From Schmidtea polychroa (Eukaryota): a DNA stretch of 64,000 nt. Positions within the stretch are counted from its first letter, which is position 1; each line of letters opens with the position of its first letter. The notes under the pieces are model-generated. The model had not been told where the DNA came from. It made no database searches and saw only the letters and a list, made by a program, of their open reading frames with translations. The translations under genes were made by a program, and so were the position numbers. The stretch spans positions 17,608,001-17,672,000 of the forward strand of contig CM097886.1 in the NCBI GenBank assembly GCA_044892525.1, read 5' to 3'. This document shows positions 1,186 to 27,132 of this stretch, piece after piece.

Positions 1186-1976
1186 TAATTAAATGAATTG
1201 TGAATTCCTGAATTACGCATATGCATTTCTAATTGTCCCAAACTGTAGTCGTTTTCTTTGCCCAATTTTCCGCTTACGACATTTAGTCTTTCTTTGTGGT
1301 TATTCATTCATTATTTCTGAACATTGGAAGTATCATTGCAGTAATTGAAGGTTTATTCCACTTCCCTTTAATTTGTAATTTCCAGTTCGAAATGCATAGG
1401 CATAATGGGAATCCGTGCATAATTTGATATCTTTTGTAATTTAGGTTTAGCCAACTATCATTTGTGTTCCATATTGTGATTAATTGAGTGTTGGGCTAAA
1501 TTTCAGAGTGGAGAAAACTGGAGCGAATAGAAAAGTAAACCTCGAATAATAAATAAGATAAAAATATAAAAATCTCACTAGTAAATAGAAAGGAACGATA
1601 AAAAATCAATAAGAGAATAAGATAAGGTAAAACAAACTGAATAAAACCCAATAAATCCCTTAAGATTTAGAAATAAAACGAGTTAAAACACACAACGGAT
1701 AAAATAGAAATAGAATAAGTAAAAAAGTGACAACAAATAAACGAGAAATTTAAGAAATAAATAAAAAATAAACCATTTTAAGTCTAATTAAAACAAAAAA
1801 TAATATTACAATAAAATAACAATAAGTCCGCAGAAAAATAGAAGAGAAAATAATAAAAATAAGAAAAAATAAATAAAATAATAATAAGAATAAGCCAAGC
1901 CATTAAAAAAATTTAATATACGATGATAAAAACATAAAAATAATAATAAATAGTAAAAATACAAACGAGTCGCGTC

Positions 1977-2101
1977 CTGATTGGACAGAAAATAATATAT
2001 AAAGAGCGACAAAAATCTGTAGAGTATCATTCTAACCCGAAACTCTACAGGTAAAAATTCATTTAAAATATTATCAATCATTCTAACCCGAAACTCTACA
2101 G
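1977..2101 (+). promoter_or_regulatory. LTR promoter: reverse CCAAT box, TATA box, Inr, short leader exon with splice donor and a 51-nt intron
   Basis: CTGATTGG 1977-1984, TATATAAAG 1996-2004, TCATTC 2027-2032, CAG|GTAAAA at 2050/2051, CTAAC...TACAG| ending 2101. The same layout is in the E2 LTR. Confidence 0.65.
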
Positions 2102-4406
2102 GACTTCAGGACCACTTAGCAGCTATTAGAACTCGTTTACGAAGCAATCCTACAAAACTACTTACAGCCGATAAGCCATTTTAGACTACTGGTTAAGAGC
2201 CTACGGAAAGTATCGAGAACTTAGACGACTTTATTATTCTATTCGATCCAGTTTTAAACTCAAAGGTATGCATTCGATTGATATTATGAATAGTTATTTG
2301 CTGTAAAAATGTTGAAAATAATGAAAAGCAGAATAAATTTTATTCAATAAATTTAATTTGAAATGAACAGCAGCCTTTTTCTTCATGGTACCGGCCACTG
2401 CACTATCTGGGACCTTCAAGCATGATGCGGCAGAGCGAAAATGCGTTGCGAAAGGGTTTGCGAGTATGCATTGCGACGAAGGGACGATATCAGTCGATTT
2501 TCGAAGTTGAAGAAGAATTGAGGAAATTGTCCAGTACGAAGGGACATGCATCTGAATGGCTCGGAAGACATCATGCTTGGAACCCAGCTGGTGGGGTCGC
2601 CGGGTAAATCTGATTTATTCATTTTATGTGTTTTACAAAATTTTTCCATTAATGTCGGAGTTGATTTTGGAATTGCTTGAATAGAGGAGTTGATCGTCTC
2701 CCATGACGGTGCAAGGACGGCGGCAGAAATGAGTGCCGTTCTTGGGTGGGTCATGAGAGGTGAGGAAACTCCGTGAGTCGAAGTATAGCTGAAGAGTGAA
2801 ATTTCCTTCATCGAGTGCGATCGACCACCGCTATCGTCGAAAATACACTTCTTAAAAGAGTAGTCGCGAAGATGAAATCATGAGAAACTCCAGGAGATCG
2901 TCGAATCAAAATCTTTTCACATTACATCCAGTCGCCGTTAATCGCATTGGAAAGTTAGAGTCCATGTCGTATATCCCTCGGGAAATTGGCACGAGAATAT
3001 CTGGTGATTGGGGATCTATAGCTGCGTAAAAAATCCAATGTTGTTCACAGAGAATGTCATAGAGCCCGAGATCTTCTAGAATACACATCGCCAGGACATT
3101 TACGACGAAACCCATAGTCAGTGTACTTTTGAGTTAGATTGTTGGTTATGAGGCCACTGATAAGCCTAGATTTTCTGAGAATAAAACAAACAAATCACGA
3201 GAAATTATCGGAATATTTACGATCGGCGTTAGAGAAACCGCAGTCGAATTTATCAGAAACTGTCAAACTAATTTCAGACAGATTATTATTCACCGGATTG
3301 TATGACTGAGGAAAACCTGACGAAGAGCGAGAGCGATAATCGTCTCTGCAATAGGTTTAGTGAATGCGTTGATAGAGAGATGTCTAAGAGTTGATAACGA
3401 CTAGAGTAAATCATCAGTTCTGACCCGCTAGTGAATTGTCGCGTAATGATTGGGTGGATACTTCTAACCAATCTCCCAGACAACTGAATCTTGATAATCC
3501 GTCTCATTTACACACTATCGGGAAATTCTTTCTCAGTAGACGGCAATTTATTCTAAATCTTAAATGGTTATGTGACACAATCGTGACGTAACAACGAGGG
3601 AGTTAATCGAGAAAATACTACTGTGTGCACAGGCGAAAGAAAGAGTTCACGCGCGTAAAGGCAGACACCCACTCTTAAACTACCATTCGAAGCAAACACG
3701 TCACCAAAACTGATTCACATGCTAGGGACAAATAACAACACTTTAGTATGCATTGTCATATATTGAATTATGTGCCGCCTTTAAACGAAAGACGATATTT
3801 TAATACAACCACATATTACGCAACGTCGTCATGACAACCTCACGGCGAAAATTTAAATAAAACTAAAAATCATAAGTTAAGTCAATAGGGAACCAAAGAT
3901 ATTCTGCTGTTAATTTTTTCCCTTTTTCCTATTTTATTTTATCTATTTGAACTACTTTAATATAACATAACGAGGTCTATTGAATATCGAATTTTTCTTT
4001 TATAATACTACTCGGTTTAGTTGTGTAGAACGTAGTAATGAGGAGTAAAATCGCAAACATCAGATAATGATAAGTAGAATAAAAGGGTTAGTCTTGTTAG
4101 TACTAGACTGAACAAGCATGAAAAGGGGAATAGTCAAACTCATAACACGTACCGATTGTAAAATGATGACAAATAAATTATGTCTAGAATTTTCGTTTTC
4201 TTCTCGTCAGGTGTTGATGGTTGAGGGGATGAATTTGAATGTTTAAAACTGGATGAATGTGGGTGCCGACTGATAATTTGGGCGTTTGAATCACCACTGA
4301 ATGGTTTGATTTCGAAAAAAGGGAACCTCATATGTAAAAATAGGAATAAAATCCTAGCCAATAAATTTTGTAAAATTAACAATGAAAGATTCTATAAACT
4401 CTTTAG

Positions 4407-5168
4407 ATGAATACCTCTACCAGCTCTGGAAAAAATCTTCGCCCGTGTCTCTTCTGCGCCGATAAAAACGCAGATATCGCGCAGCTCCACTTATACATCG
4501 GGGCACTGAAAAAGAGAATTGATCTCTACGAAGGCACGTGGTTCTCCCCGCCACAAATGCAAGAGGAACGCAAGAAAATTCTCCGATTAGAGCATTGCAG
4601 GGACAGCCTGCTAGAGGAAAGCCGTTGCCAGCGGCTCACTATCAAAGCACAATCGGAAGCCCTCCATAAGGTATATACGGAGGCAGAATTGGCCAAACGG
4701 GTCCGAGAATTTCCCGTCATCGAGAAGACCAATGTCTTCCCACCTCACCATCAGGCCTCCCAATCAACTTCAACAAGCTGCCAAAGGCATGGTACCTATC
4801 TGCCGCCCGTCCCGGCTCCAACCTTATCGAGTTATCAACCCTTGGTCGGTGGACCTACCGATCCCATCTTGGCTCCAATCTTGGTGGCACCAATCGGCAC
4901 CGCGAACGTGGAAAACCCTCCGTCTACTCGCAAACGGAAACGGCCAACTCGAGCCGAGAAGAATAAAAAACGCCGAGATGCGATGGCCGCACTCGAAGCG
5001 TCGCTATCGGTAGCCCAATCCACCATAAAGGAAATCTCTTCCAGCCATTCAATTCCAACGAAGGAAATTTTCCGTGTAATTCCCGCAGAGGGCATCAAAT
5101 ACGTCTCTAACCAACAATTGCCGGTCGACATCGACGAGATGCTTGCCGATGGGGAGTCCTTTGACTGA
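4407..5168 (+). CDS. LTR-encoded 253-aa protein (CxxC, coiled coil, Arg/Lys-rich motif, acidic tail), 5' LTR copy
   Basis: Intact ORF, homologous to the 250-aa E2 LTR ORF (LRPC..C.DKNA, EGTWFSP, EHCRD.L..ESR.QR..I..QSEALHKVY); preceded by TTTAG|ATG. Confidence 0.8.
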   Translation: MNTSTSSGKNLRPCLFCADKNADIAQLHLYIGALKKRIDLYEGTWFSPPQMQEERKKILRLEHCRDSLLEESRCQRLTIKAQSEALHKVYTEAELAKRVREFPVIEKTNVFPPHHQASQSTSTSCQRHGTYLPPVPAPTLSSYQPLVGGPTDPILAPILVAPIGTANVENPPSTRKRKRPTRAEKNKKRRDAMAALEASLSVAQSTIKEISSSHSIPTKEIFRVIPAEGIKYVSNQQLPVDIDEMLADGESFD

Positions 5169-5700
5169 CAGATTTCCATTGCCTTGATTCGGCAAGATTC
5201 GGAAGCGGACTTGAGTGTTTGTGAATATTGAACATTTATTTTTGTGACAGCCCCTTTTCCTTGTTATAAATGTAATTATTGTTGTGGATGTAATATAATT
5301 TTTATTGTCTCTCGGTGATTGTTTTTGGCATGCATGATATGGGATTAAAAGTGAACAATAGGACGATATCAGATATAGGTAGCACTACAGAGTCGTCCCC
5401 TTGGACCAGGGAAGGACCGAATGATGTGTAGAGGAACGGGTAAGACCTTCTACGGCGCCATGGAACCCGAACCGAGACAGGGTTAGGAGTAGTCTTAAGG
5501 CAGAGGCTCACCTGCTAACCTTTTCCGACCCGTGTGAGCAGCACCAACGTGGAACATCACCACGGGCTCATACGTGGGAATATGCATTCGATCATCTGGT
5601 GTATGTATGGGAAGTGCCTGAGCGGAACGATGACGCCTTGTATGAGTGAAGGTTGCGCGTGCATAATTTTTCTCTTCCCCACATACGCCAACATGATTTT

Positions 5701-5723
5701 TGGGGGCTCAGCCGGGATTTGAA
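5701..5723 (+). promoter_or_regulatory. Primer binding site, tRNA-Pro-like
   Basis: TGGGGGCTCAGCCGGGATTTGAA is complementary to a tRNA-Pro-type 3' end (...UUCAAAUCCCGGnnGAGCCC-CCA). It is separated from the LTR end by TGATTTT. Confidence 0.85.
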
Positions 5724-6154
5724 TATTGATTTGTTTGATTGTCTATTTTCGTGTTATGATGTGTTAGATTAACAATTTAATTAATTATGATGGAAATGGA
5801 ATCGGGGCCGAACGAATTATAGTGCAATGAAATGATACGAACTGTCTGAGTTTGAAATAGGGCAAGTGGTGAATGAAACGAACCTAAATGAGTTTGAATG
5901 AATATGATGAAGTATGATGAGAAAAGAAAACGGGAATTAGTTATTGTGGTTAATTTTAACTGGTTAAAATAAAAGGGGGGACGAAAGAAAGTAAGTGATT
6001 AAAGCGAAAAGATGAAAGGGGAATTTCAAGGATCGAATAAAATACAAAAGTTAAAACACTAACACATAAAAGTCAACGAATATTAAATACAAACATAATA
6101 ATATTATTTTTAATACCAGCAGGAACAAAATAATAACAACACATTCATTTAGAT

Positions 6155-6634
6155 ATGTCGGAAGCTAGACAACATCTACAACAGCTAAGCCGGTTCATCG
6201 AAATAGAAAATGATTCAATAAAAACATTAAAGGAAAAACTGAAACAAATAGAACTGTTAGAACAACAAAGCCACAACGCACCGCTGATATCCAAACAAAA
6301 CTTTCTAACCGACAGATTAGGATCAACAAATACCAACACTGACTTGTCTATTCATTATCAATGGCTTCAGCAACGTCTCGACGACCCCGCTCTGAACATC
6401 GAATATGTGAGGATACGCGAACAAGTCAAAACTCTGTCTCAGCGGATACGAACATCAATAGTAGAGAAAGCAGCGGCCTTGAGAACTTGTAACATTTGCA
6501 AGATGCGACCTGTCAAAACTCTGATTCTACCTTGTGGGCACCTTAGCCATTGTGACGAATGCGCCGCCAGTTTAATCCGTTGTTCTATGTGCACATGTGT
6601 AATAAAAGAGAAGCACACAATCTACTTCAGTTAG
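6155..6634 (+). CDS. Coiled-coil plus C-terminal IAP/MDM2-type RING finger protein (159 aa)
   Basis: CNIC...LILPCGH..HCDEC...LIRCSMC..VIKEKHTIYFS at the extreme C-terminus; ortholog in E2 at 60586-61071; no BIR seen. Confidence 0.85.
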   Translation: MSEARQHLQQLSRFIEIENDSIKTLKEKLKQIELLEQQSHNAPLISKQNFLTDRLGSTNTNTDLSIHYQWLQQRLDDPALNIEYVRIREQVKTLSQRIRTSIVEKAAALRTCNICKMRPVKTLILPCGHLSHCDECAASLIRCSMCTCVIKEKHTIYFS

Positions 6635-7227
6635 GTACGCGATCGTCGCTCGGTGAAGGAAATTGGATGATTGACAATTAGACTAAACATTTTGATATTT
6701 TTGTTCTGATTTAATTCGGTAATGTTTTATAATGATAGCATATATTATCTGTAATGTGGAGGAAATAACTAATAAATCCTTTTTGTGTATTCATTTCATT
6801 ATACGAAGTTATAAATTGATTTGTGTTGTTATAATTTTCACCATGAAGAAAGGGCATTTTAAAAATTTAAAATGATTATTTAAAGTGGAACTAGTCCCGT
6901 CATAGGGTTAAAGGGGGAATAAACCGAGCCACCTTCGGGAGGTACGATATTGGAAACCGTTGGGGAAGGGACAACCGATCACCCCGAGTAAGAGATGTAA
7001 GACGAGGTACCATCGCGAATATTGAAAAGTTTCTGCGGTATGGCTGATCACCATACCAATGTAGAAATGGATCAATGCGATCGTTTTGCGTTTTAAGCAA
7101 GGGGGGAAAGGGGAAACATTCCAAAGCGGTACAGATTAGGTCGACAAATAAAAGTAAAAATAGGAAGATGACAGTATAGAATAAAGACAGAAAAGGAACG
7201 GAAGCATGCAGAGTTTAGAGACATTAG

Positions 7228-7667
7228 GGCCGAGCTGTCGAAAAGTCCAGCCGGTCAGGGAAATTGAAACTGAGCTGTGAAAAGTCCAGCCAGTCGGGGA
7301 TAATAAGGCCGAGTTGTTGAATAGTCCAACCGGTCAGGAGAAGAAGATTGAGCTGTTGAATAGTGCCAGCCAGTCGTAAGATCGAGTTGTTGAATAGTCC
7401 AACCGGTCAGGAGAAGAAGATTGAGCTGTTGAATAGTGCCAGCCAGTCGTAAGATCGAGTTGTTGAATAGTCCAACCGGTCAGGAGAAGAAGATTGAGCT
7501 GTTGAATAGTGCCAGCCAGTCGTAAGATCGAGTTGTTGAATAGTCCAACCGGTCAGGAGAAGAAGATTGAGCTGTTGAATAGTGCCAGCCAGTCGTAAGA
7601 TCGAGTTGTTGAATAGTCCAACCGGTCAGGAGAGGAAGATTGAGCTGTTGAATAGTGCCAGCCAGTC
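7228..7667 (+). repeat. Tandem array (73-bp dimeric unit) of 12 bulged stem-loop subunits in the 5' leader
   Basis: GAGCTGTTGAA recurs at 7350, 7423, 7496, 7569 and 7642. Alternating subunits are GATTG-A-GCTG..CAGC-CAGTC and GATCG-A-GTTG..CAAC-CGGTC. Confidence 0.95.
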
Positions 7668-9054
7668 GTAAAGGCCTAAAGTAATAGTGAGATAGCATTT
7701 AAGCTACAATTTGATGACATCTAAATTACTAGTGAGATAGAATATTAAAGCTAGCTAGGAACGAATTGAATTTAAATATGGAAATTTGAATTTAGGGAAG
7801 ATTAAACGAGCTCGTGGAAAGTGATAATAAAACCCCGTTAGTGAGGGAGAAACGGAAAAAGGAAAATGAATCAGGAGATAATAGAAACAAAGAATAAGTA
7901 TGAATAGATGATGAACAAAAGAGGAAATAATTAATTAATTAAAAGGGATCCCAGATAAGTAGACAAAGTTCTACAGAATTTTTTTTGGTTTAAACCGGTT
8001 AAACGAATTTTGTTTTTGGTTCCAGAGTAGAACCGAGTAAAAGGAAACAGAGACGAAAGAGTAAATAAAATAGCGGAACCGCGTAAAAGGATTAAGGAAA
8101 ATATGGGGGGTAATAAGCAGTAACTGACAACGACCTATCGATATTATAAATGCTAACTATAGATAATTTATACGACTATATAGATAATTGTTACTACCCC
8201 AAATAGATAATTTAAAATCGACGAAAAATATGGGTTGATGGGTAATTACACTCCACGAAGAAGTGTATGAGGGGAAATGAAGAGAAGTATAACAGAGGCC
8301 CAAAAACGGTGTCTGTGCTTGAATATGGTAAAAAGGAATGATTGATTCGTGTAAGCAAATGCAACACGATATCATTTTTTCATTGTAGATATCCATCCAA
8401 CCAAGTCAATTCAGAACCAGCTCAAAAGGAATCTAGAGAATATACAAACAACCCAGGAAAAGCAATTCAGAACCCGCACAAAGGAAAAAACAAATCAATC
8501 CAAATACGGAGGACGACAACGACATCTTTATCTACGACGGAATTATCGAAATACTTAGCATCGACGTACTAGCAGAAGTCAATCAAGGACTCAGATATCT
8601 CCTCCGGAAATCAGCCGAGAAATTACGCAGAATATTCCTCGAAGAAAACACTATCAGAACCGAACTCGACCAATTCAGCAGCCGCTAACCGTAGAAAAAC
8701 CCACGTGGAAAGACAGAAAAGAGTAAAAAGAAAATCACGGATAAACCCAACCTTAGATCTTCAAGTAAGCCAGGAGACGTATTATTTTCAAGAGACGAAT
8801 TAGATCAACTCAAAAGAGGACGATCATTTAGGCAGCAGAGAGGAATATCACAAGGAGCAAAAAGACCCCACAAAACACCGATATACGATCAAGAAAACCC
8901 CACAGCCAGACATACGCCCAGTCGATCTAGAAGTAGAGAAAGCCTATCCGATATAACAAACAACCTAACCGGGTCAACAGAAGAATTATCCGTCTATAAT
9001 TTAGCGACATCGCTGGAAAATTTAAAAGAAACAATAGAGTTACAAGAACCAGTC

Positions 9055-12000
9055 ATGATGAATGTGGTAAAAACCGACGAGTATAAAGAAAAATTTAGAG
9101 GCGAACCGTTTAACGGGAATGCGAACAAGTTGGCAACGTTCATAACCAACTTTGAAGTCTATATCGATGTGTGTGGATGGACGTCCGAAGCAATTAGCAA
9201 ACGGATGCCGTTGTTTTTATGTGATAGCGCATTAGAAGTGTACTTAGAAGCTAAAGAAAGAAATACGAAGTTAGACAATTGGGAAAGCATCAAAACATTT
9301 TTGAGGAAAACCTTCGGAGCCAGCAAACCAATAAATCAAGCCCTAGGAGAATTAGCGAGTAGAAAACAAAGAGCAAATGAATCCATAACGTTATATGCGA
9401 GTGAATTGCGAAGATTGGCAAAGAAGGCCATGAACGGAAACTTGCCGGAGGAAAATCTAATTGGTTACTTCATAGAAGGACTGCGCCGAGAAGAGGTAAG
9501 GGCCTCGGTGGGATGTCAAATGTGTAAAACACTAGAAGAAGCCATAGATTTGGCCACAAGATGCGAACTACACCTCCCAGCACAAATGAATGTCATGCAA
9601 GAGGAGGGAAGAATCGCAACAGCAACGGTGAAAACGGAAAATGGAGATAACAACAATCATGAACCCAAGATGAATCAGTTTATACCAGGAGCACATCAAA
9701 TCTTCAAACCACCACAAGGACGATCAAACGGGAATAACAGTGAACGCAACAACTCGAACAATGGGAACAACTTTAATAATCGACGAAATATGAACGATAA
9801 CAAACAATGCCGAACATGCGGTAAACCAGGACATTGGGATAGAGATTGTTACCGAAACGCAAATTGCAATAGGTGTGGACGACGAGGACACACGGAAAAT
9901 ATATGCCAATTGAGAGGATGTTTTAACTGCGGTCAACCAGGTCATATCTCAAGAGACTGTCGAGAAAGGAGCCAACAACAACGACCACCACAGCGAAATA
10001 ATAACTATGCACCGAATCCGCAACGACAAAGTAATCCTAGTGAGGGAAAGCAAATGAATGTGATGCAAGAAATTTCACAAATGAAGCAGATGATGCAACA
10101 AATGATGAGACCGAGACAAGAGCAAGTACCACAACAAACCCAGAATATACGCATGATGAGGAGCACCGAGAATCTTAACAATTATGAAGTGCAACAACAT
10201 GCACAAGAATGGCAAAGACTACAAGCTGAAGAAGAGAGGATAAAAAGAGAGCGAATTCAGCAGCGACAAGAACAACCATTACGAATAAATATGATGAGAA
10301 TGGTAAGGGAGATAAAAGAGCAATATTGTTACAATTACGGTAAAAATCCAAGAGTTGTACCTATGAGCGAACCAGAGAAACCGAAAGAAACAATTACAGC
10401 AGCAAAAAAGGAAAATTCAACAACACCGCTAAAAGGAAATCAGAGAATTCAGAAAATATTTTGGAAAAAGATAAAAGATAAAATCGAAAGAGAAAATGAG
10501 AAAACAAAAACAGAAGCAGAAGCAGAAAATAACGAAAATGAAAAACAGATTAATCATCTAAATCATGATATGATACGAGAATTAGACTCAGAGGAGCTAA
10601 CGATACTCGAGAACAAAAAGTTAAAGAAAGTACCAAGAATGAGAAATTTACGAATTAATATGATGAGGACAACAAAGAAGGTGTTGTCAACAGATGACGA
10701 TGAGGATTATGTGAGTAGCCTTGGTGGAGAAATGTTACAGTTAAATGAAAATATCGACCAACTAAGAGAAAAGATCGGAGCAGATGAGGATGAAAGTGAA
10801 AGCGACGTGACAAGCGAAAGCGAAGACGGGAATATCGAAACGAAATTGAGAAAAGAAAGAGAAGAAGCGATAAAACAAGTAAAGGAAATACTTCCAGTGG
10901 TGGTAAGAAACCAGGAATTCATTGACATCATACCATACAGACGCTTCATACAAAAGATAATGAAACTAGAAAGAAACGAAAAAGATCTAATACCAAACGA
11001 GGAAAAAGCGATAATAAAGAAGTATATGGAAAAAATGAAACAAGCGGAGACAACACGCTATGTAATAAAAATCGGAACGAGTAAAGGACTCGAGAGAATA
11101 TGGATAAAAAATGCAGTTACAGACGATCTTTTCGATTGGATAAGAGAACATTTGGGCAGCTCGAGAAAGAAAGAATACCTGTATCAATATCAAGGAGAAC
11201 AAATCAAACCAGACATGCACCTAATAGATGCATTGATCTGGCCAGGAGAAACTCAAATATTGAAATTGCATAAAGAGAAGCAACCAGCAAATATTCACGA
11301 ATGGGCTAAAGACGCCAAGGCCGAGTATGACTTTAACATCAAGCTGAAGCTGGAACAAATAAAACAATGCACCTTGCGACGAAATCTAGATAAATTAATC
11401 AAACAAATCCAAGAACAAGTTGAAGATAACTGGGATTTGCTCATAACAAGACGAACTGCGGACATGCATGAACTAATGAGCCGACTGCGAGATACAGAAC
11501 TGCTCCGAATGAGTGATTGGAGAACCATAAATTTGATCCACAAATATGGAAGGTTGAAAGAAACGCAACCGCAGAAATTAGAAATAACCATATGGTTACC
11601 AAACGAGGAGAAACGACGAATAAAGATGAGTAATCAGAGTACGGTGGATGACTTAGTAACCAAGATAAACCAAGAGATAACGGAAAAAGTACGAAGCGAG
11701 AGTAGCGACGGGATGATAGATGATGTAGTCCTGATGTACGATAAAATAATATTTCGGGCCGAAGATGACACCTCGCTAAGCGAAATGGGAATGTGGGATA
11801 ATCATCAAATCATCAGAATATTGCCCATGGACGAATTCCGAACAAGAGATGTAACATACCAGAAAGAGATACGGGACAGGATGAAAACGCTATACCAAAA
11901 ATCAGTGGAGATAATTGAAATTCATCAACAATGGCTAAAGGAAAAAGAGCTTCAAGGGAAAATAAAGAAACTGAGTACTAGATCCTGCAGACGAACCCCG

Positions 12001-14886
12001 TGGGAAAGGATGTGGAATGCGGAAAACAAAGAATGGGAAATCAGGAAAGGGATTTTCGTAGAAACAGACATTGGTGAGGCAGAAAGTGAATCAGAGGAAG
12101 AGGAAGATGAACCTCCAAAATACGAAGAGGACGAAATAGAATCGATATCGGACGACGAAAGCGAAACGGATGTTACGTCAGAAAGTGAAACGGAAACCAG
12201 ACATATTCATGCGATGAGAAAGAAAGAACGCGAATATGCCGATATGGACAGCGAAGAAGCGATGGAAGCTCGAGAACGAGAAGAGAAGGAAAGATATAAA
12301 CAATTAGGTGATATCTTAGCAACGGGAGCAAAAAATCAAAAACGTCAAGTAATAGCATTGGCTAACATCATCCTAAAGACATCAGAGAATATCCACAATC
12401 TAAGAGAAATGGCGAAAGCGATTGAGGAATACCGACAATATAACGAATGGTACCCAGAACAGCTAGAACAAATTATTAGGAAATGGAGAAACCAAGAATG
12501 GGCACAAGATACCCAGGAAAGGTATCGCATCCGAGTCAAGTACCCCGACAAGAGCATTGAGGATATAGAAGTACATCCAACAACCAAGATCAGAGAATTG
12601 AAAAAGAAATTAGCATACGAAACTCCATTTCACCTACAACTATTCGGAAAATCGTTGGATGATAATGCAGATGTCGGAATAACACCCATGAGATTGGGGG
12701 AGATCAATGTATTGACAATGGCAGAAACATTGGGAAAACCGATTAAAAGGAAGAGCAAATCCAGTAAACCTACGAAAGGTAGCTTGAGTACACCAAGCCC
12801 TAACAAAGTGGCGAGTAAATCGAATGAAACCGAGGAAATCGAGGAAATTATATTGGAAGACAGCGATGAAGGAGCTGGAGAAAGATCACCAATTCTGGTA
12901 AGATGGCCGACAGGAGCCGAAATGTGGACAACAAGCCAACCATCAACTAGCTATCAACAACCAAATAAGCTGAACATAGAGGAAATTGTCGATAATACGA
13001 CAGAAACCGAAATTGACGAACAATTTCAACGACAAAAAGGACCAACGAAAGCAATATCCGAAGGTCAAACGGACAAAATAATAGACGAATGGAATGAGTG
13101 GTTGAGAAACAACGATAGCTCATTGCCAAGAACAGATAACGAGAGAAACCCGAATTATGAAACGACAAGAGAAGCTGGAACAATGATGGAGAAACGGGCA
13201 AAAGGAAGACCCAAGAAGCAAGGAGAAAAACCAGAATTTAAAACCAGAGAACAACTGAAACAAGAACAAGGACAAGTCAGATTAGAGAAACTGGATAAAA
13301 TAGTGTGGGATCTAAAAGAGACCCAGCCAACAATCGAAAGAGGCGAAAAATGGATACGAGAGCTAGTAAAAGATATGCTAATAATAACGAACCCACAATT
13401 GCGACGATTATGGCAACGAAAAGTAGCAAGCGTAGATGCCAGACAGTTATGGAATACAATATCCGGAATAATTCCGAAATTAATCAAAGAGAAGACAAAA
13501 ACCACTAAAACCGATTGGGAAGAGACAAGAAGAGTAATTGAACAATTAACTTTAAACGCAAACGACGACGAACATCATTTAGTAGTATTAACGTATCTAA
13601 TGTACAATTTGATGGGATTAGCAGCAAGGAAAATACCTAACAAACAATTCGCAAATCATGTAGAAATGACCGTTACAATCATTGAAAATACAATCGAACC
13701 ACATATTATCCGCGCCGGTGGGTGGAAAAGACTCATACAAGCGCCACGAAAAAACGAGCAAGAGAGATCAATGCAAATTCGGTTGAAGAAATTGCTAAAC
13801 GAGCTGGAATGGGAATTGCCATTGAAAGACCCAGCCAGCAGAAAAGCGTCGATTAATTCACTAATGATGACCATGATGATATGGATGCTCTGCACCAGTG
13901 GAGCCGCGGGATTTACCATTTACGACTGTGACAATTCGATAATAGGAGAAAGGTACTCCCTGAGAGATATAGAGGAATGTAGACAGGCATCTCCGAATAA
14001 ATTAGATATAGTAAAAAAGAAAGTCTCCTATCACGTATACCAAGAATCAGATTTCATTAGAACGCAAGCTAGAGAATGCGTAGTATCGAAGAAAGTGTTG
14101 GCATATTACTGTGGACAATACTCATATTCAACCCTCATATTACCTGGATTAGATAAAGAAATAGTACCTATACAACGGGAAGACTGTAAAGAGCTTTTTA
14201 GAACCGGAGCGATGAGAATCAGGGATGGAGTAACAATACACGGACAAAGCGGAATGATCAAGACAGAAAGTATCTATGTCGCCGGACGAGTAAAATCAAC
14301 TGATGGATCATGTAACGGAGGCACATATACGATCAGAGGGGAGGTGATATCGGGAGTAGTAGTAATTGAGTCCTACACAGTAGAATTGAAGGAATATGAA
14401 GCACAATTCGACGCAAACAACTATCAAATGAAAACCAACCCAGCATGCAGAGCTACGGAAAACGTGTGTAGAACGGGAATTTCGACTATAATATATGAAG
14501 CTAACACCCAAAAATGCCGACTCCAATTGTTAAAAAGTGCCCTATTCAATGAAGTAAAAGGAGAAATTTACGAAAACGAAGACGACGATGAAGAGAATGG
14601 AAACGTAAGGATGCGAAATGGGAAACCAGTTCCACCATCCCCCAAAGAAAAGAGACTCACAACCCAAAAAACACCAACGGCATTAATTACAGATGATCCA
14701 GATATCGGTATGAGATTCATCAGAGAAAAAGAGACTACCAAATGTGACAGCATAGTATATCGGACGAACTACGCAGGTATCTACATGTCAAGGCAAGTAA
14801 TAGACCGAGCAGTGGGAAAGGTAGCAACAGAGGACGTAAAATTGTACCTGTACGCCAATAACAAAATGGACTTTTTATTTCATTGA
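9055..14886 (+). CDS. gag: E1 polyprotein, N-terminal part: Gag capsid, 3 CCHC knuckles, Ubl domains, Bcl-2-like domain, first half of envelope glycoprotein
   Basis: Retrotransposon capsid motifs (EPFNG..., Q...ESI..Y...LRRLA); CX2CX4HX4C x3 at 9808-9960; signal-like segment then FTIYDC at 13912. Ends at an in-frame TGA (14884-14886) where E2 has Arg. Confidence 0.92.
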   Translation: MMNVVKTDEYKEKFRGEPFNGNANKLATFITNFEVYIDVCGWTSEAISKRMPLFLCDSALEVYLEAKERNTKLDNWESIKTFLRKTFGASKPINQALGELASRKQRANESITLYASELRRLAKKAMNGNLPEENLIGYFIEGLRREEVRASVGCQMCKTLEEAIDLATRCELHLPAQMNVMQEEGRIATATVKTENGDNNNHEPKMNQFIPGAHQIFKPPQGRSNGNNSERNNSNNGNNFNNRRNMNDNKQCRTCGKPGHWDRDCYRNANCNRCGRRGHTENICQLRGCFNCGQPGHISRDCRERSQQQRPPQRNNNYAPNPQRQSNPSEGKQMNVMQEISQMKQMMQQMMRPRQEQVPQQTQNIRMMRSTENLNNYEVQQHAQEWQRLQAEEERIKRERIQQRQEQPLRINMMRMVREIKEQYCYNYGKNPRVVPMSEPEKPKETITAAKKENSTTPLKGNQRIQKIFWKKIKDKIERENEKTKTEAEAENNENEKQINHLNHDMIRELDSEELTILENKKLKKVPRMRNLRINMMRTTKKVLSTDDDEDYVSSLGGEMLQLNENIDQLREKIGADEDESESDVTSESEDGNIETKLRKEREEAIKQVKEILPVVVRNQEFIDIIPYRRFIQKIMKLERNEKDLIPNEEKAIIKKYMEKMKQAETTRYVIKIGTSKGLERIWIKNAVTDDLFDWIREHLGSSRKKEYLYQYQGEQIKPDMHLIDALIWPGETQILKLHKEKQPANIHEWAKDAKAEYDFNIKLKLEQIKQCTLRRNLDKLIKQIQEQVEDNWDLLITRRTADMHELMSRLRDTELLRMSDWRTINLIHKYGRLKETQPQKLEITIWLPNEEKRRIKMSNQSTVDDLVTKINQEITEKVRSESSDGMIDDVVLMYDKIIFRAEDDTSLSEMGMWDNHQIIRILPMDEFRTRDVTYQKEIRDRMKTLYQKSVEIIEIHQQWLKEKELQGKIKKLSTRSCRRTPWERMWNAENKEWEIRKGIFVETDIGEAESESEEEEDEPPKYEEDEIESISDDESETDVTSESETETRHIHAMRKKEREYADMDSEEAMEAREREEKERYKQLGDILATGAKNQKRQVIALANIILKTSENIHNLREMAKAIEEYRQYNEWYPEQLEQIIRKWRNQEWAQDTQERYRIRVKYPDKSIEDIEVHPTTKIRELKKKLAYETPFHLQLFGKSLDDNADVGITPMRLGEINVLTMAETLGKPIKRKSKSSKPTKGSLSTPSPNKVASKSNETEEIEEIILEDSDEGAGERSPILVRWPTGAEMWTTSQPSTSYQQPNKLNIEEIVDNTTETEIDEQFQRQKGPTKAISEGQTDKIIDEWNEWLRNNDSSLPRTDNERNPNYETTREAGTMMEKRAKGRPKKQGEKPEFKTREQLKQEQGQVRLEKLDKIVWDLKETQPTIERGEKWIRELVKDMLIITNPQLRRLWQRKVASVDARQLWNTISGIIPKLIKEKTKTTKTDWEETRRVIEQLTLNANDDEHHLVVLTYLMYNLMGLAARKIPNKQFANHVEMTVTIIENTIEPHIIRAGGWKRLIQAPRKNEQERSMQIRLKKLLNELEWELPLKDPASRKASINSLMMTMMIWMLCTSGAAGFTIYDCDNSIIGERYSLRDIEECRQASPNKLDIVKKKVSYHVYQESDFIRTQARECVVSKKVLAYYCGQYSYSTLILPGLDKEIVPIQREDCKELFRTGAMRIRDGVTIHGQSGMIKTESIYVAGRVKSTDGSCNGGTYTIRGEVISGVVVIESYTVELKEYEAQFDANNYQMKTNPACRATENVCRTGISTIIYEANTQKCRLQLLKSALFNEVKGEIYENEDDDEENGNVRMRNGKPVPPSPKEKRLTTQKTPTALITDDPDIGMRFIREKETTKCDSIVYRTNYAGIYMSRQVIDRAVGKVATEDVKLYLYANNKMDFLFH

Positions 14887-17800
14887 GGACAAACGACAAT
14901 GCAAAAAGTGTATTACGATCTTATACAAAATGACTGTTCATTGAATAAAGAGATACTAAAAACAAAATTAGCCATCGCAATAACACACCCAGATAACACA
15001 ATGCCATCACTCCCGTTACCGGATGGACATTTTGGTAGAATGGTGGGAGAGGTAATGTATACATATGCATGTACCAAGACATTTGCGCGACTGCCAAGAA
15101 AGCCCACAATTCCACCAGGGAAATGTGCAAACGAATTGGAAATTAGCTACAAAGGGCGGAACAGATTCGTTCAACCCGTCACTCGAATTATGAACCCAAT
15201 TGGATTTTATCCGAACACCTTTAATTGTTCAAATGCATACGGGCCATTATATGAAAAACCCGATGGGAAATGGATAATGTTACCGGTAAAAACCGAAGTA
15301 CAAGAGCCTAAAAAGTTTGGATTAATAGAACTCGCAACAGAGCAAGATTTCAAACCAATTGATGTGTCAAAAGCAGGTATGTACTCACCAGAGGATTTAG
15401 AAACAGCACGACTAAACGTACTATTCCCAGCAAGGCGAGAATCCATTCTATCGAATATGGTTACCATAACTGGGGGAACGAATTTCCAGTCAGGCCCCAA
15501 TTACGAACTATTATTGTCACCCGATCATTTTCAACAAGCCACGTCAAACATGATGAAAGCAATGTGGGAAAGATTTCTAGTGTTCGGTCAAATGATGGCA
15601 GGAATATTGGGAATCATCTTAATTATTCAGATTGTCAGAGTGATATTGACTCAAATGTTAGCGTGTTTTGATATCTATAAGAGAGAAAAGAAAGTAAATT
15701 GGAAGTTGATAGTAGGTTTTCTACCATTTTTGGCAAAAACAATGGTGTTGCACGGTCATTCTAAAGATATACACAGAATAAAACGATTAATCAAAATACT
15801 GACAAAAATAAAAGGGACTGACGAGGAGGTCGGTAGACGATTTCGGAAAACAATGTATGATGAAGCAACGAGAGCGCAACTAAAAAAGAACAAACCAAAA
15901 TTCCTAGACAGATTTAGAAATCGATCAAACAGCAGCGATAGTGATGATGATGATAACGGGAATGACAAATACCCGTATCCAAGCAGAAACCCGAACGAAA
16001 GGCAAATAGAAACAGCACCATTTTGGGAGAAAGAAAAAACAAATACCTGGATAGCCAACGGAAGTTATATACCACCAGATATCGTTGGACAACAAACAGC
16101 TTTGACCATGACACAAAATATGTATCCACAGTTACCAAGTCAACCAGGGATGAACTATATGCCGACCCGAAGAACGAAAAGTGTAGACCAAGCTGATGAC
16201 GTCAGAACAATAGCAGTAATGAGTTCACCAGGAGGAGCAGCAGTAACAGTCATGATCCAAATCAACGGGAAAGAGACAAGCGCAATGATAGATACCGGAG
16301 CAAATGTATCAGCAATAGCAATAAACCAAATACCCAGTAAATGTTGGAAAGACATCGAACAAACAACTATCCATATCATCGCATGCAGTAAAGAAACCGT
16401 AGACGTGGTAGGAAGATGGTGGACTACGTTACGATATCAAGATAATGAAATTGAAACGTATCTAGCGGTGATACCCAAACTGAGTGAACCATGTATAATC
16501 GGAACGGATTTAATGCCGGAATTGTTCAAGGAAGTAGTAATTGATTTAACAACAATGTGTCTAAAAGACAAAATGGGTAGAATATGCAAGATGAACGCAA
16601 TAATTAGATGCCCGGAGAAAATAATTGTACCCGCAAAATCACAGATGATATGTCAAATAAAAGTGGATGCAGGAATGGAAGGGGAAGTCATTTTTGAGCC
16701 AAGCAAATCATTCGAAAAACGACGAGAATTACCATTAGCAAGAGAAATAATAACAATAAATGAAGACGGGGAAATACCAATCAACATCACAAATTTCGAG
16801 GAAGAAGATAAAATCATATATGAAAATGAAAGATTGGGTAGATTGACACCCATGATAGACATCGAATTACCAAAAATCACCAACGAAACAACGAAAGCTG
16901 ACGAATTATGGATAATTGATAGCACCTTGCTAACGGAAAAAGAAAAGGAAAGACTTCAACAATTATTGATAGAATATAAAGATATATTCGCAATTTCGGA
17001 TTTAGATTTGGGAGCATGCGATGTTACATTACACGCAATACCATTAATAGACGAAACTCCAATCGCACTACGTCCATACAAACTAGCAGAGAAGCAAAAA
17101 GAGATAGCCGAAACAGAAGTACAAAAAATGCTAGATGCACAAGTGATCGAACCAAGTTGTTCGCCATGGCAATTTCCAGTAGTCATGGTGAAGAAAAAAG
17201 ATGGTACTCAGAGATTCTGTATCGATTATCGGAAACTAAATGCAGTAACAAAAAGAGACACATACCCGTTACCAGACATCAATGAGATGTTACTTATGTT
17301 ACAGGGGGCCGCATATTTTACGTCTTTAGATCTGAAAAGCGGATATTGGCAGATCAAAGTCAAGGAGGAAGACAAAGAGAAAACAGCATTCACATTGGGC
17401 CGAGATCTATACCAATTCAGGAAAATGCCATTTGGACTGACCAATGCCCCAGCATCATTTCAGAGATGTATGAATTTCGTCACGCACGGGATCAAGCAGT
17501 GTATGGTATATATTGATGATTTATTAATATATTCAGCAACATTCGAACAACATTTGGAAGACATTAGAAACGTGTTCATCCGATTACGACAATGGAAATT
17601 GAAACTCAAACCATCAAAGTGTGATTGGGCAAAAGAGAAAGTTACGTTCTTAGGACACATAGTGTCAGCAAAAGGCAAAGAACCAGACCCAAGAAACATA
17701 GAAAAAATAAAAACATGTCCAGCACCAAAAACTGTCACCCAAGTCCAAGAATTTCTCGGATTATGCGGATATTATCGAAAATTCATCAAAAACTATGCAG

Positions 17801-20800
17801 GTATTGCGAAACCAATACAGGAATTAGTGAAAAAGGATATTTCATTTATTTGGGGTGCAGAACAACAAAAAGCATTTGAGACATTGCGAGATAAATTAAT
17901 TGAAGCCCCAATACTAGTACATCCTGATTTCAAGAAACCGTTCTTATTAGCAACAGATGCAAGTGGATATGCAGCCGGAGCAATATTAGGACAACTGGAT
18001 GAAGAAGGAAAAGAAAGAGTGATTGGATACTACAGCAGAACGTTTAAAAAGCACGAGAAAAACTATTCCGTAACCGAGAGAGAAGCGTTAGCAATTATAC
18101 AAGCGATTAAACATTTTCGATATTTGTTATGGGGACACGAAATATGTATCACAACGGATCATCAACCACTAGTATGGCTTGGTCAACACAAAGAAGCTTC
18201 AAGTAGATTGATGCGATGGGCAATGCAGTTACAAGAATATTCACCGTTCATAAAATTCAAAGCGGGAAGAGCGAATGCCAATGCGGATTGTATGTCCAGA
18301 TTTATCTTTCCAGATTTAGTAGATCACGAAATGCAACGAATATGTCTGATGGTAGCAGAAGATTTAGATTTTTGCCAATTACGGAAAGACCAACAAGAGG
18401 ATACAGAGTTGAAGCAAATCATTGAGTATGTGAAAACAGGGAAAGCAGAGGTATATGAGAAAGATCAAAAATTGAAGGAGCATATGGATAAACATCGACA
18501 TCGATATATTATCGAGAAAGACTGGTTGTTGATAATGGATGGAGAAAAAAGACTGATGTGCATTCCCGAGAATAGACGTAAAGAGCTGCTAACACAATAC
18601 CATGACGGAAGACTCGGAGTACATATGTCATCTAAAAAGACGTTGGCACGAATGAAACAAAAGTATTTTTGGCCTACATTGACCGAGGATGTAACAGAAT
18701 GGGTAAAGAACTGTATAACTTGCGCGACCAGAAAAAACACGGGAACGAAATGGAAGGCACCATTAAAGCCAATGCCAGTACCAGCGGAACCAATGACAAT
18801 GCTATCAATGGACGTAGTCGGTCCACTACCAGAATCAGATAGAGGAAATATATATATATTGGTAATCACAGATTATTTGACAAAATTCCCCGAAGCATTC
18901 GCAATGGCAGATCAGAAAGCAAGAACAATCGCGAAAATACTAGTAGAGGAGATATGCTGTCGATATGGAACACCAAAACAGATATTAACTGATCAAGGAA
19001 CAAATTTCATGAGCGAAATAATGAGCGAAGTCACCAACTACTTCAAGATCGCAAAATTAAGAACATCACCGTACCATCCACAAACAAATGGTATGACAGA
19101 AAGATTCAACGGAACCTTGATCCAGATGTTATCAAATTATGTCGATCGTCATCAACGAGACTGGGATGAATATATAAAATTATGCCTAATGGCTTACAGA
19201 ATGTCGATTCACGCGTCCACAAAGATGAGTCCGTTCAAGTTGATGTACGGCAGAGAATGCAATATGCCAATGGATTTGGAGTATCAGCCACCAATATCAC
19301 AGTATATGGAAATAGATGATTATGTAACCAAGTTCAAGGAAAGAATGCAGGAAATCTGGGAAACTGCAGGATTGAATATAAAATTTTATCAAGAAAGTTA
19401 CAAAGATCTACATGATAGAAAGAAAAACGTCAAACAGCATACGTTTCAAACAGGCGACTGGGTGATGATCGAAACACCAGAATTAATTCCAGGAACCACC
19501 AAAAAATTACAACGAAACGGTAAAGGTCCGTATGAGATTCTATTCATCGGAGAAACCAATGTGAGAGTACGATTGGTAAACAACCCCTTCACGAGGCCAA
19601 TATATGTAAATGTGGCACGATGCAAGCCAATTCCGAAAACCGCCACCAGTCAGCCAGAAGGACGAACATTAACAACAAGATCACAAACGTATAGAATAAA
19701 TATGTTACAACAGATAAACGAACCAACAGGTAACCGATTGGGGTTACAACCATCAGAAGCAGAGAAAATCATAAAGGAAGTGAAAGCTAAAATGCCCGGA
19801 TGGGCAGAAGACAGATTAGATTTTGAGATATTGGGAGGTCTGCTAACAATGATCGAAAATTATGCAAACCGAGAAAGAACACACCCATTACTCAGGGTAG
19901 TAAAAAGTCAATGGCCTATATTATTTACGATCACAGACCATTATGGAGATACACCGCTGCACAAACTTTTAAAGGTCGGGAATAATGAACAAATACTGGA
20001 AACGATCGAAGCATTTCGCGACTGTAACATTTCGACGGATCAAGAAAACAACCAAGGTTACACTCCACTAATGATAGCAGCCAATCGGGATAAAGCTAAA
20101 GATATTATCATCGCATTACTTGAAACTGGGTCAAAGATAACCACACAAGACCACAACCAGAAAAATGCACTACATCATGCAATCGAAGGGAAAAGTACGG
20201 AAGCCTTCATAATCTTAGTAGATCTATTATCATATGAGGATCATAGGGAGATAGGAAACATGTATGACGGGCTATTAACTGCAATCAAAGAGAAATTAAT
20301 AACAATTGCTGGATTACTAATTGCATGGAGGAACCCGATCAAAAACGATTATATGGTAGATATAAACGAAACATTTACCAAAGGAGAAAACACCTTGATG
20401 AGAGAAGCGATGAGAGGACATCACCTATTCGAAATTCCAAATCAACTACTACAACGTGGCATAAAGTTTTCAAATCACAAAGACGAACAACTAATCAGAA
20501 AACGAATTACCAAATTCGAAAAAGCTATATCTCAATTTACCGATAAAGTACAAGTAAAATTTTGGGAAACCGTGAGTGTATTATATATGATGGAAACTAT
20601 GAACAACATTCGAGAAAACTACCTAAGTATTATTCAAGTGCTTACGGCGGAAGAACGCATTAACAGTTCAAACAAGAAAAAGATAAAAATAAAGAAAGTA
20701 AAAACAAGAGAGTCTGAGGAACAAGTCGATCAAATAATAACCGATATAGCAACAACAAGTAAACCAAAGATAATAAACTCAGACCAGGAGATAATAATAC

Positions 20801-22929: not shown

Positions 22930-23097
22930 AAAGGATTATGACTGTATATAGATTGTAAAAAGTAAGTAGGTAATATTTATTTATATAACAGTACTCGATA
23001 TTTTTATATAAGCGCGGTATCAATAGTATATAATGATGGGGATAATTAATATGAAAATAAAATTAGATAAGGATTGAAAAGTATATATAAATTAAGA

Positions 23098-23457
23098 ATG
23101 GAACGAATAGGCGAGGAAGTAAATCACAGTACGACAACCGAGGAGATGTGGAAACAACAATGTGCAATGTTAACTCAAGTGATTTCGAATTTACAGGAAC
23201 AAGGACTCGCTGTACAAAGAAGCTTAGTCGAAAGTTTAAATAAAGGCTTCAGTTATGTAAGAATAATCGAAGACCAACGAATAAAAATAGAACAAATGCA
23301 GCGAGAGATAGACCGAATATCACGATACAGCCAGGTGCAAGAAGAGGAGTTAATAAGAATCGCGGAAGAGATGGAGCGAGAGGAGATAGAAGACTGGTCA
23401 GAATGGTTAACCAGCAGGGAAGAGGGCGGACAAGAGGCCGACTCTTCCAGCCAATAA
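23098..23457 (+). CDS. Small acidic coiled-coil accessory protein (119 aa from first ATG)
   Basis: Conserved with E2 43856-44215 (WKQQCA.L.Q..SNLQEQGL, EDWSEWL); the ORF track starts at a TTG, first ATG is 23098. Confidence 0.75.
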   Translation: MERIGEEVNHSTTTEEMWKQQCAMLTQVISNLQEQGLAVQRSLVESLNKGFSYVRIIEDQRIKIEQMQREIDRISRYSQVQEEELIRIAEEMEREEIEDWSEWLTSREEGGQEADSSSQ

Positions 23458-27073: not shown

Positions 27074-27132
27074 AACCAACAAAAAGCGATGTATATAAAT
27101 ATGTATAAAATAACTAAATGTATATCAGTATC

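What the first reader, a model, noticed from the sequence alone, without database searches (positions are those of the whole stretch)
7228..7667. Array of 12 (E1) and 14 (E2) bulged-A RNA hairpins with extensive compensatory changes
Seen: each subunit folds on the sense RNA as a 5-bp lower stem, a bulged A, a 4-bp upper stem and a 9-11-nt loop (UUGAAUAGU(G)C or UGAAAAGUC). The upper stem covaries GCTG/CAGC vs GTTG/CAAC. The lower stem varies GATTG/CAGTC, GATCG/CGGTC, GGCCG/CGGTC, and in E2 GGTCG/CGATC and GATTG/CGATC. All of these keep pairing, several through G-U wobbles that work only on the sense strand; only two edge subunits lose the outermost pair. Copy number differs between elements. 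Established: bulged hairpins are protein-binding sites (MS2 operator, TAR, RRE/CTE export elements). Inference: a multivalent export or packaging signal on the unspliced genomic RNA.
Basis: partly seen in the sequence, partly recalled or inferred. Interest (0 to 1): 0.85.

Follow-up and report, generated by a model that had tools for sequence, protein, structure and literature searches.

The report
Hairpin array in giant retroelement leader
Two 30-kb Burro-like LTR retroelements each carry, between the primer-binding site and gag, a tandem array of 12 or 14 small bulged-A hairpins that fold only on the sense strand; it is most likely a protein-binding RNA platform, but its role (packaging, export or something else) is untested.

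Summary
E1 (+, 7228-7667) has 12 subunits and E2 (-, 59494-60005) has 14. Each subunit is a 5-bp lower stem, an invariant bulged A, a 4-bp upper stem and a 9-11-nt loop. The motif occurs nowhere else in the window.

RNAalifold predicts the same fold without guidance. The hairpins fold well on the sense strand and poorly on the antisense strand, because 25 of 26 carry one G.U pair.

"Extensive compensatory changes" is overstated. The arrays were homogenised recently, so the 26 subunits reduce to 9 distinct sequences in two alternating lineages, A and B. Three of 9 pairs covary, through about three double changes.

The core hairpins are 93% identical between E1 and E2, against 78% for the flanking leader (p=0.003).

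The host elements are giant gag-env-like-pol LTR elements of the Burro kind. The array lies in a 2.4-kb non-coding stretch of the leader.

Best reading (about 0.45): a multivalent protein-binding RNA element on the genomic transcript, most plausibly a Gag/NC packaging platform.

Rivals are a DNA-level enhancer or insulator array, neutral slippage amplification of one hairpin, and a decoy-splice-site/purine-rich control element.

No further family copies could be reached, so the covariation test remains underpowered.

The parts
7228..7667 (+). E1 hairpin array. It has 12 subunits in strict A/B alternation (6 dimers). Three are diverged edge subunits (7228, 7268, 7307) and nine are homogenised core subunits. 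A-to-B spacers are purine-only and 10 nt long; B-to-A spacers are GUAA.
59494..60005 (-). E2 hairpin array. It has 14 subunits (7 A/B dimers), with the same boundaries relative to the flanking sequence as in E1. A-to-B spacers are purine-only, 12 nt long in the five core repeats and 9 and 11 nt at the two ends of the array.
1489..32251 (+). Element E1, 30.8 kb. Its LTRs (1489-5693 and 28047-32251) run TG..CA and are 99.93% identical. A 4-bp target-site duplication, TGAG, flanks the element.
5701..5718 (+). E1 primer-binding site. The 18 nt, and 30 nt in all around it, are identical in E2 (61389-61406, - strand).
6155..6634 (+). Leader ORF of 159 aa with a C-terminal RING (PF13920), upstream of the array. 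The E2 counterpart at 60586-61071 (-) is 43% identical in protein.
9055..22929 (+). E1 giant gag (Retrotrans_gag, 2 CCHC) - mononegavirus-like fusion glycoprotein - PR - RT - RNase H - IN - ankyrin reading frame. It is interrupted once by an in-frame stop.
44376..58230 (-). E2 counterpart of the giant reading frame. Gag to ankyrin is continuous; there is one frameshift relative to E1 in the part after it.
35176..64000 (-). Element E2 as far as the window shows it. The 3' LTR starts at 35176 and the 5' LTR (61411-64000) is cut by the window end. From 314 nt before the array onwards the internal region is about 81% identical to E1.
4407..5168 (+). ORF inside the LTR (253 aa, with a basic K/R patch). 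It is repeated at 30965-31726. The E2 counterparts at 61948-62700 and 35713-36465 (-) are 37% identical in protein.

Best explanation
The array is a cis-acting structured RNA element of the full-length sense transcript: a row of 6-7 pairs of small bulged-A hairpins, each offering the same loop and the same G-A(bulge)-G / C-C junction. It would act as a multivalent binding platform for one protein.

It lies in the non-coding leader between the primer-binding site and gag, and the element encodes a Gag with two CCHC knuckles. The most likely partner is therefore Gag/NC, and the most likely role is high-avidity capture or nucleation of the very long (about 26 kb) genomic RNA for particle assembly. 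Nuclear export is the second possibility.

Shown: the hairpins, their strand specificity, their conservation and their position. Inferred: that a protein binds them, which protein it is, and what follows from binding.
For: (1) All 26 subunits fit one fold, and RNAalifold predicts it unaided.

(2) Stems vary more than loops (8 of 18 stem columns variable against 4 of 11 loop columns), yet 96.3% of cells pair. Slid-partner controls give 0-48%.

(3) Pairs 3/28, 4/27 and 8/24 switch between C-G and U-A, with U.G intermediates seen for the first two.

(4) 25 of 26 subunits have exactly one G.U in the lower stem. On the antisense strand these become A.C. Local-fold pair probability is 0.65-0.91 on the sense strand for 11 of 12 E1 hairpins (subunit 2: 0.34). 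On the antisense strand it is about 0.01 for core A-type and 0.63 for B-type.

(5) The arms are asymmetric (10 nt against 9 nt) because of the bulged A, which is invariant in 26/26. That fits an RNA bulge motif and not a symmetric DNA site.

(6) The A and B lineages kept the hairpin while their spacers became unrelated (GUAA against 10-12 purines).

(7) Core hairpins are 55/59 identical between E1 and E2, against 920/1182 for the flanking leader (Fisher p=0.003). The B hairpin is 30/30 identical.

(8) The position is 1.4-1.5 kb after the 5' LTR and about 1.4 kb before the gag ATG. The sense strand there is non-coding (8-15 stops per frame) and the period is not a multiple of 3.

(9) Precedent: leader packaging signals bound by Gag (PMC8096270), and multiple stem-loops sharing a loop motif and a 5' bulged A that act cooperatively in capsid assembly (PMC6281560).
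Against: Independent evidence is thin.
- There are only 9 distinct sequences from two related elements. The counts of pairs or pair types with double changes do not exceed shuffles (66/500 and 476/500).
- The tool itself warns that related sequences can beat shuffles on the other measures without any structure.
- The three stem differences between orthologous E1 and E2 subunits (two preserving, one breaking) match the neutral expectation. By my enumeration, about 56% of transitions preserve pairing.
- Single hairpins are only marginally stable.
- No palindromic, dimerisation-type loop is present.
- No Rfam match.
- Distant relatives (43-46% pol identity) lack such hairpins. One of them has non-folding tandem arrays upstream of gag, so tandem arrays in this position need not be RNA structures.
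- No transcript data were available. Neither the transcription start, nor splicing around the array, nor any protein binding is known.
Confidence: 0.45

Rival explanations
1. The array works at the DNA level as a transcription-factor binding array (enhancer or insulator) in the 5' untranslated region, as in Drosophila gypsy. The conserved 'loop' would be the binding site and the flanking inverted repeat would be incidental.
For: The position and copy number parallel the gypsy insulator: 12 sites in 340 bp of the 5' UTR (PMC2374998). The most conserved part of each unit is the loop (7 of 11 columns invariant). Burro-type elements show tissue-specific expression (PMC8532177). Tandem arrays upstream of gag also occur in a distant relative, without any hairpins. 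Higher conservation of the hairpins than of the flanks fits DNA function equally well.
Against: A DNA site does not explain why arms change on both sides so as to keep complementarity. It also does not explain why the non-Watson-Crick positions are G.T on the sense strand in 25/26 units, against 3 A.C, nor why the arms keep a 10/9 asymmetry. The Su(Hw) consensus from PMC2374998 is absent from the arrays.
Confidence: 0.2
2. The array is a neutral by-product. A single hairpin (functional or not) causes polymerase pausing and template switching during reverse transcription or replication, so the segment is repeatedly duplicated and homogenised. Copy number would have no function.
For: Units within an array are 98-99% identical, while the arrays differ by about 10% between elements. 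Amplification or homogenisation is therefore recent and lineage-specific. Copy number differs between the elements (12 vs 14). Tandem repeats are marked on the published Burro maps and are common in LTR-element non-coding regions (PMC6431247). All stem substitutions are transitions, about half of which preserve pairing by chance.
Against: The diverged, non-homogenised edge subunits (7228, 7268, 7307; 59977-60005) still fold. The A/B dimer organisation and the array boundaries are kept in both lineages. Hairpin cores are more conserved than the flanks. The G.U excess runs opposite to what the A-rich sense-strand composition would produce.
Confidence: 0.2
3. The array is a splicing or polyadenylation control element: repeated 5'-splice-site-like GUAAG cores (one in every B-to-A linker) next to purine-only spacers. 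These would bind U1 snRNP and SR-type proteins, in the manner of the Rous sarcoma virus negative regulator of splicing, or of U1-mediated suppression of premature polyadenylation. The hairpins would set the spacing or the accessibility.
For: GTAAG occurs 4 times in the E1 array and 6 times in the E2 array. It is depleted in the E1 internal sense strand overall (19 found against 36 expected from composition), and 9 of those 19 lie in the 3.4-kb leader. The 22-kb internal sense strand holds 47 AATAAA. Five of the eight purine runs of 12 nt or more in the E1 leader lie in the array.
Against: The evidence is at motif level only, from one amplified unit per array. Apart from the 5-nt core the match to a 5' splice site is poor, and part of the core lies inside the next hairpin's stem. 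Purine richness is the general composition of this strand (42 such runs in the internal region). The comparison with the avian element rests on my own knowledge, not on a tool result.
Confidence: 0.1

Closest known systems
Retroviral and LTR-retrotransposon leader packaging signals (Psi), e.g. the MMTV Gag-binding loops (PMC8096270)
   Same: They lie in the leader between the primer-binding site and gag. They are stem-loops with single-stranded purine-containing loops, and the element encodes a Gag with CCHC knuckles.
   Different: Known Psi regions are single, irregular multi-helix domains with long-range interactions and a dimerisation palindrome. This is a regular tandem array of one small hairpin type, lies 1.5 kb from the PBS, and has no palindromic loop.
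MS2/PP7-type operator hairpins and 'multiple packaging signal' assembly (PMC6281560)
   Same: Each is a small hairpin with a 5' bulged A and a shared loop motif. Many copies act cooperatively on capsid protein.
   Different: The loop here is 9-11 nt, not 4-6. The copies are contiguous, not dispersed. No levivirus-type coat protein is present (Pfam). The host is a retroelement.
Gypsy 5'-UTR Su(Hw) insulator (PMC2374998)
   Same: It consists of twelve closely spaced repeats in about 340-440 bp of the 5' untranslated region of a Ty3/gypsy-type element with an env-like gene.
   Different: The gypsy sites are non-palindromic DNA sites in AT-rich spacers. Here the units are strand-specific hairpins and the Su(Hw) consensus is absent.
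Tandem repeats marked on Burro elements of planarians (PMC6431247, Fig. 2A legend)
   Same: The element type is the same: over 30 kb, LTRs of about 4 kb, env-like domain in frame between gag and pol, and ankyrin, MATH/TRAF and RING domains. Tandem repeats are drawn on the published map.
   Different: The paper neither analyses nor interprets the repeats. Whether they are this array could not be checked, because no Burro sequence was reachable with these tools. The domain order here also differs (the TRAF-like ORF lies downstream of pol, and there are two CCHC knuckles).
Constitutive transport elements and their multimerised forms; Rev/RRE-type systems (from my own knowledge)
   Same: They are structured RNA with repeated protein-binding motifs that let intron-containing retroelement RNA leave the nucleus, and avidity rises with copy number.
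   Different: Those elements lie near the 3' end or within env and have internal-loop motifs. No Rfam retroviral element matches here, and no adaptor protein is identified.
Yeast L-A totivirus encapsidation signal (Fujimura et al. 1990, listed in the references of PMC8780742; details from my own knowledge)
   Same: It is a stem-loop with an A bulged on the 5' side, and its loop sequence matters for capsid binding.
   Different: It is a single copy in a dsRNA virus and is bound by the Pol part of Gag-Pol.

Membership tests
Burro-like giant Ty3/gypsy LTR elements | Total length over 30 kb, with multi-kb LTRs and a target-site duplication | tested here: met
   E1 is 30.8 kb. Its LTRs are 4.2 kb at 99.93% identity, and the TSD is TGAG.
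Burro-like giant Ty3/gypsy LTR elements | Gag, an env-like mononegavirus-type fusion glycoprotein and pol in one reading frame, plus ankyrin, MATH/TRAF and RING domains | tested here: met
   Pfam hits; the family is described in PMC6431247.
Burro-like giant Ty3/gypsy LTR elements | Sequence similarity to named Burro or GYPSM1 copies, and a planarian host | not testable with these tools
   No planarian sequence is in any searchable collection. The gag searches returned only three unnamed metaclust proteins at 38-52% identity.
Retroviral Psi packaging signal | Lies in the leader between the PBS and gag | tested here: met
   PBS at 5701-5718, array at 7228-7667, gag ATG at 9055.
Retroviral Psi packaging signal | Palindromic dimerisation loop | tested here: not met
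   The loops, as read, hold no self-complementary hexamer. The reverse complement of the loop occurs nowhere else on the E1 sense strand.
Retroviral Psi packaging signal | Bound by Gag/NC and present only on unspliced RNA | not testable with these tools
   No transcript or binding data are available.
MS2/PP7 operator hairpins | 5' bulged A in a short stem | tested here: met
   Column 6 is A in 26/26 subunits.
MS2/PP7 operator hairpins | 4-6-nt loop with the family's recognition motif, and a levivirus coat-protein partner | tested here: not met
   The loop is 9-11 nt. No coat-protein domain was found in either element.
Gypsy Su(Hw) insulator | Cluster of sites matching the Su(Hw) consensus given in PMC2374998 | tested here: not met
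   There is no match in either array, and one unrelated match in the window.
Any curated RNA family (Rfam 15, including retroviral cis elements) | Covariance-model match | tested here: not met
   No match at E<=1 in 5600-9200 on either strand.

The most novel reading that the evidence does not exclude
The array is a dedicated, element-specific RNA 'handle'. Six or seven hairpin pairs would be read by an element-encoded protein: Gag/NC, or one of the conserved accessory proteins (the basic LTR-encoded protein or the leader RING protein). This would let an unusually long retroelement RNA of about 26 kb be selected, exported or condensed. It would be a regular multi-site protein-RNA recognition system, of a kind so far known from engineered MS2/PP7 arrays and dispersed viral packaging signals, evolved naturally in a retroelement.
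Probability: 0.25. Interest if true: 0.7.

Novelty: new variant of a known kind. Interest (0 to 1): 0.5.

Why it matters
Burro-type elements are the largest LTR retroelements known, and how their very long, A-rich RNA is handled is not known.

A regular natural array of identical bulged hairpins in the leader would be a concrete, testable candidate for the cis signal. It would also be a rare natural counterpart of the synthetic hairpin arrays used for RNA tagging.

If it turns out instead to be a DNA enhancer or insulator, or a slippage by-product, it is an ordinary feature of LTR-element leaders.

Tried and rejected
(1) More family copies for a proper covariation test. None were found.
- Gag searches found only three unnamed proteins without contigs.
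- Exact-protein look-ups failed.
- A motif scan of metagenome and viral contigs gave only single chance hits and no arrays.
- Further pattern scans and gag-based locus searches in viral and prokaryote-genome contigs found nothing.

(2) Distant relatives with the same gag-env-pol layout (43-46% pol identity; L001, L002, L132-L134).
- None has hairpins of this type.
- The tandem arrays of L133 do not fold.

(3) Rfam: no match.

(4) Coding: rejected, with many stops in all sense frames and a period of 73/74.

(5) A link between the PBS/tRNA and the hairpin arm. A shared 7-mer occurs only in the two first subunits and is about as likely as not by chance (my estimate, 0.3), so it was dropped.

(6) A kissing partner for the loop elsewhere in the element: none.

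(7) Candidate RNA-binding folds in the LTR ORF, in the unassigned 1,300-aa middle of the E1 polyprotein, and in one accessory ORF: no PDB sequence match.

(8) tRNA genes in the window: none.

This report gives only counts of breaks.

Full report
WHAT IS IN THE WINDOW

The window holds two giant LTR elements in opposite orientation.

E1 (+ strand) has 4.2-kb LTRs at 1489-5693 and 28047-32251. They are 99.93% identical, run TG..CA, and are flanked by a TGAG target-site duplication.

E2 (- strand) has LTRs starting at 35176 and at 61411. The second is cut by the end of the window.

Pfam shows the following:
- a gag (Retrotrans_gag plus two CCHC knuckles);
- a mononegavirus-type fusion glycoprotein in frame between gag and pol;
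- PR, RT, RNase H and IN, followed by ankyrin repeats;
- a separate RING+MATH (TRAF-like) ORF;
- a small RING ORF in the leader.

This is the layout described for the Burro elements of planarians (PMC6431247). That paper's map marks tandem repeats but does not analyse them. Membership by sequence could not be tested, because no planarian sequence is in any searchable collection.

Relative to each other, E1's giant reading frame carries one in-frame stop and E2's carries one frameshift (counts).

THE OBSERVATION

TRF reports arrays at 7230-7671 (period 73, 5 copies, 99%; older 39-nt copies at the 5' edge) and at 59490-59976 (period 74, 6.6 copies, 98%).

A structural regex finds 12 subunits in E1 (7228-7667) and 14 in E2 (60005-59494, - strand), and none elsewhere. 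A covariance model built from them finds only these 26 in the window. It finds nothing convincing in five loci of distant relatives.

Each subunit has a 5-bp lower stem, a bulged A, a 4-bp upper stem and a 9-11-nt loop. RNAalifold predicts this fold unaided.

The subunits alternate strictly between two types:
- A: upper stem GUUG/CAAC in the core units.
- B: upper stem GCUG/CAGC.

E1 therefore has 6 dimers and E2 has 7. B is followed by GUAA and then A. A is followed by 9-12 purines and then B.

The array boundaries are the same in both elements.

HOW STRONG IS THE STRUCTURAL EVIDENCE

For the structure:
- 18 of 30 alignment columns are invariant. These include the bulged A, the G-C pairs on both sides of it, and 7 of 11 loop columns.
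- Stems vary more than loops, yet 96.3% of stem cells pair. The figure is 91.2% when 3' letters are shuffled (0 of 500 shuffles reach the observed value) and 0-48% when partners are slid.
- Three pairs switch between C-G and U-A.
- 25 of 26 subunits carry exactly one G.U pair in the lower stem, at position 2, 3 or 4. The antisense strand therefore folds much less well: centroid -44.6 against -109.7 kcal/mol.
- Local pair probability on the sense strand is 0.65-0.91 for 11 of 12 E1 hairpins. On the antisense strand it is about 0.01 for core A-type and 0.63 for B-type.
- The core hairpins are 55/59 identical between E1 and E2, against 920/1182 for the adjoining leader (p=0.003). The B hairpin is identical.
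- The spacers of the A and B lineages are unrelated, while the hairpins are kept.

Against, or limiting:
- The units of one array are near-identical through recent amplification or homogenisation. The 26 subunits are therefore 9 distinct sequences from two related elements.
- The measures that count pairs or pair types do not exceed the shuffles (66/500 and 476/500).
- By my reading there are about three double changes, four single wobble changes and three disruptions, and all of them are transitions.
- About 56% of transitions keep pairing by chance. The three stem differences between orthologous E1 and E2 subunits say nothing on their own.
- Single hairpins are modestly stable.

My assessment is that the hairpins are real and probably selected. 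"Extensive compensatory changes" overstates the case.

CONTEXT

The array lies in a 2.4-kb stretch with no sense ORF, between the leader RING ORF (stop at 6634) and the gag ATG at 9055. This is 1.5 kb after the 5' LTR and the PBS (5701-5718).

E1 and E2 are mosaic:
- The LTRs and the first 1.2 kb of leader are not alignable as DNA (LTR ORF 37% and RING ORF 43% protein identity).
- The 30 nt around the PBS are identical.
- About 81% DNA identity begins 314 nt before the array.

The array therefore belongs to the conserved internal module.

WHAT IT MOST LIKELY IS

The best reading is a multivalent protein-binding RNA element on the full-length sense transcript (confidence about 0.45).

Within this reading, I consider packaging or nucleation by Gag/NC the most likely role, because of the position and the CCHC Gag. 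There are precedents in leader Psi elements (PMC8096270) and in cooperative multi-hairpin packaging signals with a 5' bulged A (PMC6281560). Nuclear export is a second option. None of this is tested.

RIVALS

(a) A DNA-level enhancer or insulator array like the 12 Su(Hw) sites in the gypsy 5' UTR (PMC2374998).
- The position and copy number fit.
- The two-sided arm changes, the G.T-over-A.C asymmetry and the constant 10/9 arm asymmetry do not.
- The Su(Hw) consensus is absent.

(b) Neutral slippage amplification of one hairpin.
- It fits the recent homogenisation and the variable copy number.
- It is echoed by non-folding tandem arrays upstream of gag in a distant relative.
- The diverged edge subunits still fold, and the hairpins are more conserved than the flanks.

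(c) A decoy-splice-site/purine-rich control element.
- Every B-to-A linker forms GUAAG.
- That pentamer is otherwise depleted in the internal sense strand (19 against 36 expected).
- The strand carries 47 AATAAA.
- The evidence is at motif level only.

COMPARISON AND NOVELTY

The array is not a member of any Rfam family. It is not an MS2/PP7 operator (wrong loop size and no coat protein) and not a Su(Hw) array.

It works most like a packaging-signal array. I rate it a new variant of a known kind, of moderate interest. It could become more interesting if a copy census and transcript and probing data confirm a selected, genomic-RNA-specific structure.

LIMITS AND SLIP

- No further family copies could be obtained.
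- The host species is not established.
- My first notebook entry names a coordinate adjacent to E1's break.

Noticed in passing
window 1489-6913 vs 60325-64000: E1 and E2 are mosaic. The LTRs and the first 1.2 kb of leader are too diverged to align as DNA (encoded ORFs 37-43% identical), yet the 30 nt around the PBS are identical and everything from 314 nt before the array onwards is about 81% identical. This suggests an exchange of the LTR/leader module between lineages.
   Followed up: partly
window 4407-5168, 30965-31726 (+); 35713-36465, 61948-62700 (-): A 250-253-aa ORF is conserved inside the LTR. It has a Cys-containing N-terminus, a K/R-rich patch and an acidic C-terminus. It has no Pfam or PDB sequence match.
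   Followed up: partly
window 6155-6634 (+); 60586-61071 (-): A ~160-aa ORF with a C-terminal RING (PF13920) is conserved in the leader upstream of the array. It is the first long ORF after the PBS, so gag is not the 5'-proximal ORF of the full-length RNA.
   Followed up: partly
window 7376, 7449, 7522, 7595 (+); 59937-59567 (-): Each B-to-A linker makes a GUAAG core next to a purine-only spacer. GTAAG is depleted in the E1 internal sense strand (19 against 36 expected), and that strand holds 47 AATAAA.
   Followed up: partly
window 7976-8025 (+): A T-rich tract ending in CAG lies in an otherwise purine-rich leader and looks like a possible splice acceptor. Its conservation in E2 was not checked.
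   Followed up: no
window 23547-24935 (+); 42382-43800 (-): A separate RING+MATH (TRAF-like) ORF lies downstream of pol, and ankyrin repeats are fused after the integrase. Three more conserved-position ORFs before the 3' LTR have no family match.
   Followed up: partly
window 75-680 (+): The ORF flanking E1 matches a DDE_1 transposase domain, so E1 sits next to, or in, another transposon remnant.
   Followed up: no
L002 2334-5753; L133 17034-24564; L001 16872-18689: Metagenome contigs (ERZ25039515) that carry distant relatives of the element also carry short bacterial-type gene fragments (MacB, ABC transporter, luciferase-like, Mnh) and a protein-primed DNA polymerase B. This points either to assembly chimeras or to a host rich in foreign genes.
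   Followed up: no
L133 936-2629: Four different tandem arrays (periods 38-79) lie upstream of gag in a distant relative. The two that were folded show no structure beyond shuffles.
   Followed up: partly
window 1834-1894 and 28392-28452: A short A-rich tandem repeat lies inside the E1 LTR.
   Followed up: no
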